In this document: in pieces, positions 1,440 to 15,420 of the stretch
Position numbering within the stretch: position 1 is the stretch's first letter
How the letters are laid out: every line of letters starts with the position of its first letter
NCBI RefSeq assembly: GCF_048593235.1
Contig: NC_133619.1
Coordinates: 636,904,558 to 636,968,557 of the forward strand
Direction of reading: 5' to 3'
Length of the DNA stretch: 64,000 bases
Origin: Sminthopsis crassicaudata
Taxonomy: Eukaryota
Translations under genes and position numbers: made by a program
The notes under the pieces: model-generated
Told to the model about the DNA's origin: nothing
What the model saw: the letters and a program-made list of their open reading frames with translations, nothing else
Database searches by the model: none

Positions 1440-2450
1440 TGGCACCGTGAGAGGGGCCGGGGAGGCGGGGGGAGGGGCGGCCCGGGCGCAGGACCGGGGG
1501 GAGGGGAGGGGGCGGGGCAGCCCGCGGCGCACGACAATAATAAGCGCCACAGCGCCCCGACCCGGCCGGCGGGAAGCGGCGCGCCCAGCCCAGCCCTACC
1601 AACACCTCCACCAGCACCTCCACCTCCACCTCTGGCAGCAGCAGCAGTAGCAACAGCACCACCACTACTTCCACTACCACTACCGCTTCCACCACCACCA
1701 GCACCACCACTACCACCGCGGGGCACCACGGGAGCTAGAGCTTGACGCGCCGCCCGGCCCCTTCTACTCCCCGCCGGGAAGACGGAGGCCTGGGGTCTCA
1801 GGGAGGAGCAAAAGAAGTGCGGCGCGGGGGCCGCTGGGAAATGTAGTCCCTCCACTTCCCCGCTTCCGTTAGCTAAGGGAAAGGAGCCGGGGGCGGAGAG
1901 TGGCCGACTACGTGCTCCCGAGCAGGTCACTAGAGGGCACGAGGTAGGCCGATGGGGGGCTCGGAGGCCGCCGGTAAATGTGGTCCTTCTTCCCCACCAA
2001 CGCCATTGTTCTTTCCGGCTCAAGCTTAGCAGCGCGGACTACAGCTCCCAGGGGGCAATGTGGCCAAGAGGGAAGAAAAGAAGGGCGGAGCGATAAAGCA
2101 CACGGAGAGCGAACCTCCTCGGTTTTGCGGAGGGAAGGACTGGGGGAAAGGGCGTCAGACCCTCACGCACTGGGGCCCCGGGGGCTGGGCTGGCGGCTTC
2201 GCGTGGAGACGCCCACTTCCTCCACCCGGGGATTGCGTTGCCAAAGTTTGGCGAGCGCGGGAAGCCCCCAGACCCTTCGGGTCCGCTCGTGGTGCCGAGC
2301 CGGCTGGACGCTTCCTTAGAGTAAGAGGCATCTCCGCCTCCTGCGGGCCCTCCCTCCCCCCGCCACTGCCAGGGTCTCGGGTGACGCTGCGGGGGGAGCC
2401 CGGACCCCGTCCCCCAGGAAAGCGACCGAGGGTCTGGAGAGGCGGGGGTC
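1440..2450 (-). promoter_or_regulatory. KMT2B CpG-island promoter with two ZNF143/SBS-type motifs
   Basis: Very high CpG density; ACTACAnnTCCCAG-type motifs at 1833-1847 (minus) and 2038-2051 (plus). Confidence 0.75.
1598..1718. repeat. Imperfect trinucleotide tract (CAC/CAG/TAC) upstream of the KMT2B ATG
   Basis: accaacacctccaccagcacc...gcagcagcagcagtagc...accaccactaccacc read directly. Confidence 0.85.
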
Positions 2451-2551
2451 ACAGGCGCTACGGTGGGGGACTGCTCGCGTGGGACCGCTAAGTCGGACAC
2501 GCTTTTCCTCTTCCTCCTTATTCCTCCTCCGAGAGCCGAGGCTCCGGCAGC

Positions 2552-4397
2552 TTTATTGCCTATCCGCATCCCCTCCGGCCGCGCCAGCGCGCCCGCACTG
2601 AGGCAGGCAGCCGAGGAGAGCGCCCCATCTCCGGGCTTGGCCGCGCCGCTCCAGTGCCGTTTGTGGCCAGAGAAGGCCCCAGAGAATGGGGGCGCAATGA
2701 GAAGACGAGGGACGAGGTCCGGAGGAAGACTAGAGGGAAGCGGCCTGGACGGCCCATCCAGGGGGCAGTTGTCCCGGTGGGCAGCTCCGAGTGTGGGCCC
2801 GCCTCGGAGCCGCGTTGGGGCAGCTAGCCTGGCACAGTGGACACCGGTAAGGGGCCGTGCCCTGTGTCCCGAGGTGCTTGGCTGCAGAAGTCCCGGGAAC
2901 GCTGGGGGCGGAGGCGGCGAGATTAGGGCTTCTCCCCTAGGGAAGGCGGAGAAGCACAGGTGAAGGCCGGGCCGGGCCCAGGCCCAGGTATGGCCATTGG
3001 GGCGGGAGGGGAAGGGGGAGCAGCCTCCTGGCTCTGTCCTGCTCAGAAGGACCCCGCCCCCCACAAAGTCGAGGGCAAAGCATGGATTCCCTGAGGCAAG
3101 ACACCAAGTACCTGCCCGGGCTCTGCAGCAAGAGTCTCCATCTTTCCTCGTCTGGGCCGAGACCCCGAGGGGGGGCCACGGGCTCTGCTAAAGCCGTGGG
3201 GTGAGCAGCAGCCTCCGGGGGAAAGTCCACCGAGGGCTCTGGGAGGTCCCTGGGACTGGCCGCCAGGGGGCAGGGCGGGCACGGCGGGGCCTGCCTGTGG
3301 GGATCCCAACTCTTACCTGCCCTGCTCCTGCGCTCAGAGGCGGCCTCCATCCTCAGTTAGAGGGACCTGCTCAAGCCACGGGGTCTTCCCTCTGCCCATC
3401 CGAGGGGCTTGGCCTGCCAGTAAATGAGAGGTGCCCAGTCCAGGCCAGGAATGGGAGAACTTAGCGGGGCAGGGGAGGGAGGAAGCACCCAAGCCTCTGC
3501 TTGGGTGTTCCAGCTCCCAGAGGCCACTCGCTCTGTGGATTCTTTCCTGCCTTTTATCTAGGCAAAAGTGCCTTCGTGGCCGCTCCTGACATCTCCATGT
3601 TCCATCCCAAGAGCCTCCCTCTTATTCCCCCTCCACGAACTCACCTCTGTTACCGAGGTCACATTTCTCCTCAGGCTCCAGTCCCTGGAGTGCTATGGGA
3701 GAAAGGGGTCCCATGGCCTCTGAGCAGCGGGGTCTGCTGCTGGGGGCATGGGGATAAGAGGCCTCCTTAGCCAGCCTTAGGAGGTTCCCAGACTCTGAAG
3801 ACACTTGGGGAGGGGTCTCTGCCAAGGGCCCCTGCCTGTGGCTGCATTCTGTGGTAGATTCTCCTGCTGCTTTTAGCAGCACCACCTCCAGGCTCAGTGG
3901 TTCTTCTCCCACCTTCTGGGAGATGTGCTTGACCTCTGCCCATCATTAAGGGGCATCCCCAATTCCAACTTTTTGGATTCATCCTTCCCCTCCTCTTTCC
4001 TCTCTAGTTGGTTCTTGTCCTCCTACCATTCCAGGCCCTGATATCCCTTTTTGACCTCTTTCCCAAGAACCTTCCTGAACTTCTACTTCAAAGGTCTCTG
4101 TATCCGGGCCCCAGGCTATCTTGAAGAGGACCCAGCTCTCCAGGCTTCAGCATCAGGGTTTCCTCATCAACAGTGCAAAAAGTGGGCAGAGATGGAAGGG
4201 CCAATGCCCTAGAGGTCTATCGCCCTCTCCAGCCCAGCTGCTGGCTCCTGTTTGCCAGCACCAGGCTGTGTGTGGCCTAGGAACTTGTGCATCCTACACT
4301 GACCACAGCGTCACAAAGTGCTTCCCTTAAAGTAGCTGCTGGTCAAACTAGTCCGTACACACTGAGGGCTGGGCAGCTGCACTGAAGGCAAGGCCAC
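2552..4397 (-). pseudogene. ZBTB32: ZBTB32 pseudogene (BTB exon about 3645-4397; small exons about 3493-3557 and 3317-3366; ZF exons 3112-3294 and 2730-2936; AATAAA 2552-2557)
   Basis: Fragments LPSP, ALCDAVVSVG, HSLVLANRSQQLG, LKPGELGPLQ, GTPFSHSTPGTGA, GEKP*SRRLRPQRSRDF and KHLGTQGTAPYRCPLCQASCP...QLPPGW match human ZBTB32 in order at the syntenic position; start codon is GTG; many stops and frameshifts. Confidence 0.92.
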
Positions 4398-14072: not shown

Positions 14073-14700
14073 CGCCACGGCCTCGCCTCCTCCTCGTCCT
14101 CTGCTCCGCGGCTCCCTAGTCGAGCCGGGCCTCCGCTCCCGGGCCTCGCCGCCGCCGCCGCGTTCCCATAACGGCCTCTCGCCGTTGGGCCCTTTCCCGC
14201 CTTTTCTCCCAGGCTCGCTCCCGCGCTGTGGCGGTTGGTGGAGAACGACAGAGAGGGGGAGGGAAGGAGGGATGGGTCTCTCCAAGCTTAGTCCCAAAGT
14301 GCCGTGAGAGTCCTGAAGTCATCGAAAAGCTCTTCCGGGATAGTTTGGCCGTGTCCTGTTGTGGGTCCTGCCACCACCCTTCCTCTCAGGTTAGAGTGGT
14401 CGAAATGGTGACAGAGGTTTCTTTCCCGCCAAGATGAACGGTCCCCTCTGTGATTGGTCGAGGAGCTTGCACCTCAGGGCACGTGAGGGAGAGGAGGTGG
14501 GAAAGAGATAGGAGGAGGCTGCCCTCACTGCTACCTCTGATTGGTTGCAGAACTCGTGCCTCTTTTCCCTATTGGCCGAGGTGAGTCAAAGGGGAGGCGG
14601 AGACTCTTTGTTTTGCTGTAAAACTGGCTTCCCGTCAAGTGACGGATTGGAAGTTGTCCGGGTCAATAGGTAAAAGAGGTGTATGTCCCGGCATCCCCTT
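14073..14700 (-). promoter_or_regulatory. CpG-island promoter and non-coding first exon, probably the upstream ZBTB32 promoter
   Basis: CpG-rich; four ATTGG (CCAAT on minus) at 14453, 14540, 14571 and 14646; E-box CACGTG 14480-14485; donor GTGGCG|GTGAGG at 14072. Confidence 0.65.
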
Positions 14701-15029: not shown

Positions 15030-15420
15030 AGCGTGCACCGTGCAGTGCATCAGATCACATGCAGCATGCAGAATGCATCTTGTAGCAGGTAGTGTGTCGT
15101 GTGCAGTGCATCAGATCGCGTGCAGCATGCATCGTGTAGCAGGTAATGAGCAGTGTGCAGTGCATCAGATCGCGTGCAGCATGCATCGTGTAGCAGGTAA
15201 TGAGCAGTGTGCAGTGCATCAGATCGCGTGCAGCATGCATCGTGTAGCAGGTAATGAGCAGTGTGCAGTGCATCAGATCGCGTGCAGCATGCATCGTGTA
15301 GCAGGTAATGAGCAGTGTGCAGTGCATCAGATCGCGTGCAGCATGCATAATGTAGCAGGTAATGAGCAGTGTGCAGTGCATCAGATCGCGTGCAGCATGC
15401 ATCGTGTAGCGTGCGTCATA
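15030..15420. repeat. 54-bp minisatellite, about 7 copies
   Basis: tagcagg recurs at 15137, 15191, 15245, 15299 and 15353. Confidence 0.95.

What the first reader, a model, noticed from the sequence alone, without database searches (positions are those of the whole stretch)
2552..4397. ZBTB32 is a pseudogene at its own syntenic locus (probable gene loss)
Seen: every part of ZBTB32 is recognisable between UPK1A and KMT2B, but it is broken. The start codon is GTG (4395-4397), the BTB domain has several frameshifts and a W-to-TAG (4217-4219), the end of coding exon 1 reads GA*GEM*PR*Q (stops at 3671-3673, 3659-3661, 3650-3652), the Cys pair of ZF1 is deleted, ZF2 starts GEKP* (2923-2925) with Cys-to-Arg changes and a frameshift, and there is a Y-to-TAG at 2730-2732. 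Established: ZBTB32 (ROG/FAZF/TZFP/PLZP) is a PLZF-like repressor acting in NK-cell expansion, memory B-cell recall, T-cell GATA3 control and testis. Inference: so many independent lesions mean an old loss rather than sequencing error, i.e. a lineage-specific loss of a lymphocyte regulator. That would be relevant to dasyurid immunity if the species call is right.
Basis: partly seen in the sequence, partly recalled or inferred. Interest (0 to 1): 0.75.

Follow-up and report, generated by a model that had tools for sequence, protein, structure and literature searches.

The report
Dead but transcribed ZBTB32 gene
In this carnivorous marsupial the lymphocyte regulator gene ZBTB32 sits in its usual place but is wrecked by more than twenty stops, frameshifts and deletions. 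It is a real, old gene loss, although the relic is still copied into spliced RNA, and the opossum has independently lost the front half of the same gene.

Summary
On the minus strand between KMT2B exon 1 and UPK1A, every coding exon of ZBTB32 is recognisable but broken. I compared it with the intact tammar wallaby gene. The start codon is GTG, and there are at least 13 in-frame stops and at least 8 frameshifts. One small exon is mostly deleted. The first zinc-finger exon has lost its splice acceptor, its cysteine pair and both histidines. Fingers 2 and 3 have lost zinc ligands.

Contigs from independent public runs carry the same sequence, so this is not an assembly error.

New here:
- **RNA:** the relic is transcribed and spliced (GT..AG introns), but no reading frame exceeds 138 codons.
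- **Age:** a related species about 95% identical shares the exon structure and the TAG at 2732-2730. The two species differ at a 9:3 non-synonymous to synonymous ratio, so decay predates their split.
- **Other marsupials:** the wallaby gene is intact and constrained. The opossum's BTB exon is independently dead while its zinc-finger half carries no lesion. The koala's annotated product lacks the BTB domain and finger 1.

This is a unitary pseudogene. The loss is not purely dasyurid-specific erosion. I found no paper describing it. An intact copy elsewhere in the genome could not be excluded directly.

The parts
14073..14300 (-). Upstream non-coding first exon (E1) of the ZBTB32 transcription unit. 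Its 3' end is at 14073 with the donor GT at 14072-14071. Its 5' limit is approximate.
   Evidence: The loose end of an RNA contig from the related species (X19) joins the 97-nt exon directly to sequence matching 14084-14106. The GT follows at 14072-71. The first coding exons of the opossum and koala models map here.
3645..4397 (-). Remnant of the first coding exon (BTB/POZ domain plus linker). ATG is changed to GTG, and there are 10 in-frame stops, at least 6 frameshifts and a deletion of about 19 codons.
   Evidence: Frameshift-aware alignment to wallaby P0063 gives 55% identity over 225 codons. The nucleotide alignment to wallaby is 68-79% identical. The donor GT at 3644-3643 is used in RNA.
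3464..3478 (-). Last 15 nt of the second coding exon (90 nt in wallaby). The first ~75 nt are deleted and the donor GT is changed to TA at 3463-3462. The exon is not in the RNA.
   Evidence: Three-way nucleotide alignment of window, wallaby and opossum.
3317..3413 (-). The 97-nt exon seen in RNA. A cryptic acceptor in the old intron is followed by the remnant of the third coding exon (3366-3317). The exon's own acceptor region is deleted (~31 nt), it has a 21-nt internal deletion, and CAG is changed to TAA at 3359-3357.
   Evidence: Splice joints with GT..AG ends in X1 and X19. Three-way alignment. X19 has CAA at 3359-3357, so this stop is private to the window's species.
3112..3215 (-). Remnant of the zinc-finger-1 exon (168 nt in wallaby). 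The acceptor AG is changed to CG at 3217-3216. Deletions of 21 nt and ~33 nt remove the Cys pair and 'FSLKHQ'. A +2 nt insertion is present and both His are lost. The donor GT at 3111-3110 is intact. The exon is skipped in RNA.
   Evidence: Three-way alignment and frameshift-aware alignment. It lies inside the intron 3316-2937 that RNA contigs splice out.
2552..2936 (-). Last exon, carrying ZF2, ZF3, the C-terminal tail, the 3' UTR and AATAAA at 2557-2552. Lesions are TAA 2925-2923, both ZF2 Cys changed to Arg, ZF2 second His changed to Gln, a frameshift near 2886, ZF3 last His changed to Cys, TAG 2732-2730, and a frameshift near 2696-2695.
   Evidence: Alignments to wallaby and opossum proteins, 81% nucleotide identity to wallaby, and the acceptor AG at 2938-2937 used in RNA.
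4220..4222 (-). Polymorphic extra stop. CGA in the window and in X1 reads TGA in runs X5 and X3. It is the codon immediately before the fixed TAG at 4219-4217.
   Evidence: Difference 4222 G>A on the + strand in whole-stretch contigs of two studies; codon read.

Best explanation
This is the orthologous ZBTB32 gene, dead in place: a unitary pseudogene.

Shown:
- It lies between UPK1A and KMT2B on their strand.
- All five ancestral coding exons can be traced against the intact wallaby gene.
- Every one of them carries disabling changes: start loss, at least 13 stops, at least 8 frameshifts, exon and splice-site deletions, and lost zinc ligands in all three fingers.
- The lesions are present in independent samples.
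- The promoter and several splice sites still work. RNA runs from an upstream non-coding exon or from the dead BTB exon, through a 97-nt exon made by a cryptic acceptor, into the last exon, skipping the finger-1 exon. No frame stays open for more than 138 codons.

Inferred:
- No ZBTB32 protein is made.
- The loss is fixed and tens of millions of years old. It predates the split from a species about 5% diverged.
- The RNA is residual transcription rather than a new function.
For: Synteny and identity:
- UPK1A exons and KMT2B exon 1 flank the relic.
- The same gene order is seen in opossum L001 and wallaby L002.
- The best database relatives of the finger piece are ZBTB32 orthologues.

Lesions:
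- Pfam finds no BTB domain in the pieces, and only one sub-threshold finger.

A valid intact reference exists:
- The wallaby genome encodes an uninterrupted 466-aa protein.
- It has Pfam BTB plus fingers.
- Its BTB matches the solved human ZBTB32 BTB structure 3M5B at E 4e-44.
- Its branch dN/dS is 0.13-0.28.

Not an artefact:
- 16 runs hold most of the stretch.
- X5 and X3 span it in one contig with 4 and 2 differences, one of which adds a stop.

Transcription:
- Joints 3645|3413 and 3317|2936 have GT..AG ends in X1, and the second joint is also in the bona fide RNA-seq run X19. Neither is in the DNA run X5 or in run X3, whose kind is not on record.
- E1 is joined to the 97-nt exon in X19.
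- There is no long ORF in the joined reading.

Age:
- X19 is about 95% identical, shares TAG 2732-2730 and the exon layout, and differs by 9 non-synonymous to 3 synonymous changes plus indels that are not multiples of three.
- Each species also has private ligand losses.
- The window branch has dN about 6 times that of wallaby.
Against: - The whole genome could not be searched, so an intact copy elsewhere is not formally excluded.
- The runs were available only as contigs, so read-level allele frequencies are unknown.
- Differences within about 37 nt of contig ends are not listed. Sharing of TAA 2925-2923 with the related species is therefore unverified.
- The species names are coded, so the relative's identity and the split date are unknown.
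- The window-branch dN/dS is 0.41-0.71, not 1. Its dS is about four times that of the other branches, which I cannot fully explain, so the age estimates are rough.
- Spliced, moderately abundant RNA leaves room for an RNA-level role.
Confidence: 0.92

Rival explanations
1. The lesions are assembly or sequencing errors and the gene is really intact.
Against: Contigs from other studies reproduce the 2.2-kb stretch with 0-4 differences, and none of them repairs a lesion. Most lesions are substitutions or multi-base deletions rather than homopolymer slips. A related species carries its own version of the damage.
Confidence: 0.01
2. This is a dead duplicate, and a working ZBTB32 survives elsewhere in the genome as a translocated or retro-copy.
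For: The whole genome was not searchable here. The protein lists were capped at 120 rows, so the absence of a dasyurid ZBTB32 protein is only suggestive.
Against: The relic occupies the exact orthologous slot with its introns, so it is the original gene. ZBTB32 appears once at this locus in opossum and wallaby. Neither the DNA run X5 nor run X3 shows an intron-less joined form. No marsupial ZBTB32 protein other than opossum, wallaby and koala appeared among the 120 rows listed in each of two word searches, nor among the 45 matches of the exhaustive search of representatives; the word-search lists are capped and the representatives are 50% clusters, so this is suggestive only.
Confidence: 0.04
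3. The gene is dead as a protein but kept as a functional non-coding RNA or as a transcription unit that influences the adjacent KMT2B promoter. This does not exclude the best explanation.
For: Spliced RNA is present in two species, with conserved use of the same donor and acceptor sites and of the upstream exon. The 3' end lies only a few hundred bases from the KMT2B 5' region, and an X19 contig runs on past 2400.
Against: Exonic divergence between the two species (about 4%, with indels) equals that of the flanking 3' region. Both spliced and unspliced forms are present. Residual promoter activity is common in unitary pseudogenes (general knowledge).
Confidence: 0.1
4. The locus still encodes a short or re-framed protein, as the annotated BTB-less products of opossum and koala suggest.
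For: NCBI annotates BTB-less ZBTB32 proteins in opossum and koala that start in the upstream exon. The opossum's finger half carries no lesion.
Against: In this species the frame from E1 into the 97-nt exon stops at TAA 3359-3357. The finger frame stops at 2925-2923 and again at 2732-2730. All three fingers lack ligands. The longest stop-to-stop frame of the joined exon A, 97-nt exon and last exon is 138 codons and has a Met only at codon 129.
Confidence: 0.02

Closest known systems
ZBTB32 (FAZF/ROG/TZFP/PLZP), the PLZF-like BTB-zinc-finger repressor of mammals
   Same: Same chromosomal slot between UPK1A and KMT2B, same strand and same five-coding-exon layout as wallaby and opossum. There is residual similarity in the BTB, linker, three fingers and C-terminal tail.
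   Different: No start codon, no open frame, no Pfam-detectable BTB, and no finger with four zinc ligands. Two exons are largely deleted or unspliceable.
Unitary pseudogenes already noted in this genome by the scan (for example NFKBIL1, note s1-184960)
   Same: An immune-related single-copy gene decayed at its conserved position, with breaks shared with a related dasyurid.
   Different: Here the relic is shown to be transcribed and spliced, and the same gene is independently half-dead in the opossum. I did not re-test the NFKBIL1 claim.
Opossum ZBTB32 (XP_056681303-5) and koala ZBTB32 (XP_020827585) as annotated
   Same: Transcripts start in the same upstream exon and avoid the BTB part. The koala model, like the RNA here, skips the second coding exon and the finger-1 exon.
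   Different: The opossum keeps about 230 lesion-free codons with three intact fingers. The koala keeps two readable fingers. This species keeps none.

Membership tests
ZBTB32 orthologue (locus identity) | Lies between UPK1A and KMT2B on the same strand | tested here: met
   UPK1A exons at 17.8-20.1 kb and KMT2B exon 1 at 763-1716, both on the minus strand. The order is the same in opossum L001 and wallaby L002.
ZBTB32 orthologue (locus identity) | Sequence closest to ZBTB32 rather than to other BTB-ZF genes | tested here: met
   An exhaustive HMMER search with the finger piece puts opossum, wallaby-type, koala, platypus and eutherian ZBTB32 at the top. Nucleotide identity to the wallaby gene is 68-81% exon by exon.
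Functional ZBTB32 protein | ATG-initiated open reading frame through all coding exons | tested here: not met
   GTG replaces the start codon, and there are at least 13 stops and at least 8 frameshifts. The longest stop-to-stop frame in the joined RNA is 138 codons.
Functional ZBTB32 protein | N-terminal BTB/POZ domain | tested here: not met
   Pfam and PDB searches of the stop-free BTB pieces find nothing. The region has 3 stops and 5 frameshifts within the first 115 codons. The wallaby control passes.
Functional ZBTB32 protein | Three C-terminal C2H2 fingers with all zinc ligands | tested here: not met
   ZF1 has its Cys pair deleted and both His lost. ZF2 has both Cys changed to Arg, its second His changed to Gln, and a stop and a frameshift. 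ZF3 has its last His changed to Cys.
Unitary pseudogene | A functional orthologue exists in a related lineage | tested here: met
   The wallaby genomic ORF is intact and its branch dN/dS is 0.13-0.28.
Unitary pseudogene | Lesions are real and fixed | tested here: met
   Independent runs from several studies carry them. Fixation is inferred from contigs only.
Unitary pseudogene | No functional copy elsewhere in the genome | not testable with these tools
   Only this 64-kb window is held. Indirect evidence: no intron-less form in the DNA run X5 or in X3, and no dasyurid ZBTB32 protein in the capped lists.
Processed (retro-) pseudogene | Intron-less copy away from the parent locus | tested here: not met
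   Introns are retained and align to the wallaby and opossum introns. The position is syntenic.
Transcribed pseudogene | Spliced RNA from the locus | tested here: met
   GT..AG joints are present in X1 and in the RNA-seq run X19, and absent from X5 and X3. The upstream exon join is shown.

The most novel reading that the evidence does not exclude
ZBTB32 has been dismantled independently in at least two, perhaps three, marsupial lineages, with the BTB domain going first.

- The opossum retains, under selection, a BTB-less three-finger protein driven from the upstream exon.
- The koala retains at most two fingers.
- Dasyurids have lost everything but the spliced RNA.
- Macropods keep the full gene.

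This would imply that the need for BTB-dependent ZBTB32 repression in lymphocytes was relaxed early in marsupial evolution.
Probability: 0.45. Interest if true: 0.55.

Novelty: new member of a known kind. Interest (0 to 1): 0.45.

Why it matters
ZBTB32 is studied in mice as a brake on memory-B-cell recall and CD8 T-cell responses (PMC6813321, PMC5578684).

A natural, long-standing knock-out in dasyurids, a natural BTB-less allele in the laboratory opossum, and an intact gene in the wallaby give comparative immunologists a ready-made series. It can be used to ask what the gene and its BTB domain are needed for.

There is also a practical warning. 'ZBTB32' in the opossum and koala annotations is not the canonical protein.

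The mouse knock-outs are viable with mild phenotypes (PMC5909056), so loss of this gene is not very surprising.

Tried and rejected
1. I first read the 97-nt transcribed exon (3413-3317) as the finger-1 exon, and 3553-3454 as its 5' half. Three-way nucleotide alignment with the wallaby and opossum loci showed it is the third coding exon's remnant plus old intron. The true finger-1 remnant is at 3215-3112. The 'exon B' row is therefore invalid.
2. A tandem duplication inside that region scored no better than shuffled sequence.
3. PDB and Pfam searches with the short stop-free BTB pieces gave nothing, because the pieces are too short and degenerate.
4. I tried to fetch other dasyurid loci. A word search with a long incidental ORF (2042-3064) found nothing. 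Exact look-ups of wallaby X1, opossum X2 and koala proteins were not on record. The longest isoforms did work.
5. A 30-mer search with up to 3 mismatches missed the upstream exon, and a fuzzy regex timed out. blastn-short then found it.
6. Four literature searches for ZBTB32 with pseudogene, marsupial, Tasmanian devil or gene loss found nothing relevant.

Procedural points:
Searches used stop-free pieces by reference. The joined reading was only translated locally.
- No N run lies in the region.

Full report
**Locus.** On the minus strand the window carries three landmarks:
- KMT2B exon 1, at about 763-1716.
- The ZBTB32-like stretch, 4397-2552.
- UPK1A exons at about 17.8-20.1 kb (tetraspanin hits, 84-95% identical to opossum UPK1A).

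The opossum locus L001 and the wallaby locus L002 have the same order on one strand. Earlier notes of the scan describe the genome as a carnivorous marsupial. I did not test the species call.

**Reference genes.** An exhaustive HMMER search used the only sizeable stop-free finger piece (2936-2733). It returned ZBTB32 of opossum, a wallaby-type protein, koala, platypus and eutherians as the best hits.

The tammar wallaby protein (P0063, 466 aa) is encoded without interruption by five exons in its genome. It has Pfam BTB plus fingers. Its BTB matches the solved human ZBTB32 BTB (3M5B, E 4e-44). It serves as the intact marsupial reference.

**Lesions.** I aligned the wallaby protein to each exon with a frameshift-aware dynamic programme of my own. 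I also aligned the three loci as nucleotides.

- **Exon A (4397-3645).**
  - The ATG is GTG.
  - In-frame stops are at 4345, 4279, 4219, 4025, 3896, 3875, 3779, 3673, 3661 and 3652 (first base of each, minus strand).
  - Frameshifts lie near 4364, 4210, 4172, 4117, 4077 and 3710.
  - About 19 codons are deleted.
- **Second coding exon (90 nt in wallaby).** Only the last 15 nt remain (3478-3464), and the donor GT is TA.
- **Third coding exon.**
  - The remnant is 3366-3317.
  - Its acceptor region is deleted.
  - It has a 21-nt internal deletion.
  - CAG has become TAA at 3359-3357.
- **Finger-1 exon.**
  - The remnant is 3215-3112.
  - The acceptor reads CG instead of AG.
  - Deletions of 21 nt and about 33 nt remove the Cys pair and 'FSLKHQ'.
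  - There is a +2 insertion.
  - Both His are lost.
- **Last exon (2936-2552).**
  - TAA is at 2925-2923.
  - Both finger-2 Cys are Arg.
  - Its second His is Gln.
  - A frameshift lies near 2886.
  - The last His of finger 3 is Cys.
  - TAG is at 2732-2730.
  - A frameshift lies near 2696.

Frameshift positions depend on the alignment model. The stops do not.

**Not an artefact.** Twenty runs hold the stretch or part of it, and 16 hold at least 77% of its sampled words. I laid four runs:
- X1 matches with no difference.
- X5 (DNA) and X3 each span all 2.2 kb in one contig, with 4 and 2 differences.
- Two of those differences are in an intron, and one (3707) is inert.
- One (4222 G>A) turns CGA into TGA, a polymorphic extra stop next to the fixed TAG.

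All runs were contigs, so allele frequencies are unknown.

**Transcription.** X1 and X19 carry short contigs that join 3317 to 2936. X19 is a true RNA-seq library. X1 also joins 3645 to 3413. Both skipped segments have GT..AG ends on the minus strand. Neither the DNA run X5 nor run X3 shows either joint.

In X19 the 97-nt exon is joined upstream to sequence matching 14084-14106. That exon ends at 14073 before a GT. It is the same upstream exon in which the opossum and koala models start.

So the promoter and several splice sites are alive. Translating the joined exons locally gives no frame longer than 138 codons between stops. The joined sequence was not sent to any search tool.

**Age.** X19 is from a relative about 95% identical.
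- It shares the exon layout, the 21-nt deletion and the TAG at 2732-2730.
- It has CAA where the window has TAA (3359-3357).
- In the last exon it differs by 9 non-synonymous and 3 synonymous changes, plus indels of +3, +1, +1, -1 and -12.
- One of its changes removes a finger-3 Cys. The window alone has lost a finger-2 His.

Divergence in the former coding part equals that in the 3' flank. That is neutral decay in both lineages after a shared inactivation. Differences near contig ends are not listed, so sharing of TAA 2925-2923 is unverified.

Three-point branch estimates are below.

| Branch | dN/dS, exon A | dN/dS, last exon |
|---|---|---|
| Wallaby | 0.28 | 0.19 |
| Opossum | 0.96 | 0.87 |
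| Window | 0.41 | 0.58 |

The window-branch dN is about six times the wallaby's. Its dS is also about four times larger, which I cannot fully explain. Possible causes are alignment bias through frameshifts, or loss of constraint on silent sites. I therefore give only 'tens of millions of years'.

**Other marsupials.**
- **Opossum, BTB exon (L001 21795-22637).**
  - Leu replaces Met1.
  - There are three stops (21945, 22083, 22285) and three frameshifts.
  - None of these is shared with the window.
- **Opossum, C-terminal half.**
  - About 230 codons with three fingers carry no lesion.
  - At the lesion density of the BTB exon, about 6 lesions would be expected there (Poisson P about 0.002, my arithmetic).
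  - This suggests a retained BTB-less protein.
- **Koala.**
  - The annotated protein reads the end of exon A in a non-ancestral frame and lacks BTB and finger 1.
  - I had no koala DNA.
- **Platypus.** ZBTB32 has no Pfam-detectable BTB.

The erosion is therefore recurrent rather than purely dasyurid.

**Literature.** Four full-text searches found no report of ZBTB32 loss in marsupials. Mouse work shows modest, context-dependent phenotypes (PMC6813321, PMC5578684, PMC5909056).

**Verdict.** This is a real, old, fixed unitary pseudogene that is still transcribed. It is a new member of a known kind, of moderate interest, raised somewhat by the parallel half-loss in the opossum.

Noticed in passing
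L001:21795-22637 (opossum, GCA_027887165.1): The opossum's ZBTB32 BTB exon is itself dead: Met1 is Leu, and there are 3 stops and 3 frameshifts against wallaby. None of these lesions is shared with the window. The remaining ~230 codons with three fingers carry no lesion, and the annotated isoforms start in an upstream exon.
   Followed up: yes
Protein P0013 (koala XP_020827585.1) against L001 and the window: The koala's annotated 'ZBTB32' reads the end of the first coding exon in a non-ancestral frame and skips the second coding exon and the finger-1 exon. Its fingers score below the Pfam thresholds, so it is probably another decayed copy. No koala DNA was available.
   Followed up: partly
Protein P0010 (platypus XP_028920767.1): Platypus ZBTB32 has fingers but no Pfam-detectable BTB domain. 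Its N-terminus is only faintly BTB-like.
   Followed up: no
window 4222: A polymorphic nonsense variant (CGA to TGA on the minus strand) is present in runs X5 and X3 but not in the window or X1.
   Followed up: yes
window 15067-15410: A 54-nt tandem repeat of 6.4 copies, 96% matching, lies in the GC-rich region upstream of the ZBTB32 first exon. It is open in both strands' frames.
   Followed up: no
window 4600 upward, and 2400 downward: The X1 contig that ends at the exon A donor extends about 1.7 kb beyond 4600. The X19 last-exon contig runs about 0.9 kb past 2400 towards KMT2B. Whether these are unspliced RNA, read-through or overlap with KMT2B transcripts is unknown.
   Followed up: no
window exon A and last exon, branch estimates: Synonymous-site divergence on the window branch is about four times that of the wallaby and opossum branches (0.66 against 0.15 in exon A). 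The cause is unexplained: alignment bias, or loss of silent-site constraint in a CpG-rich region.
   Followed up: partly
window 3414 with L002 and L001 counterparts: The 'cryptic' acceptor used by the 97-nt exon also has an AG at the same place in the wallaby and opossum intron, so it may be an old alternative acceptor.
   Followed up: no
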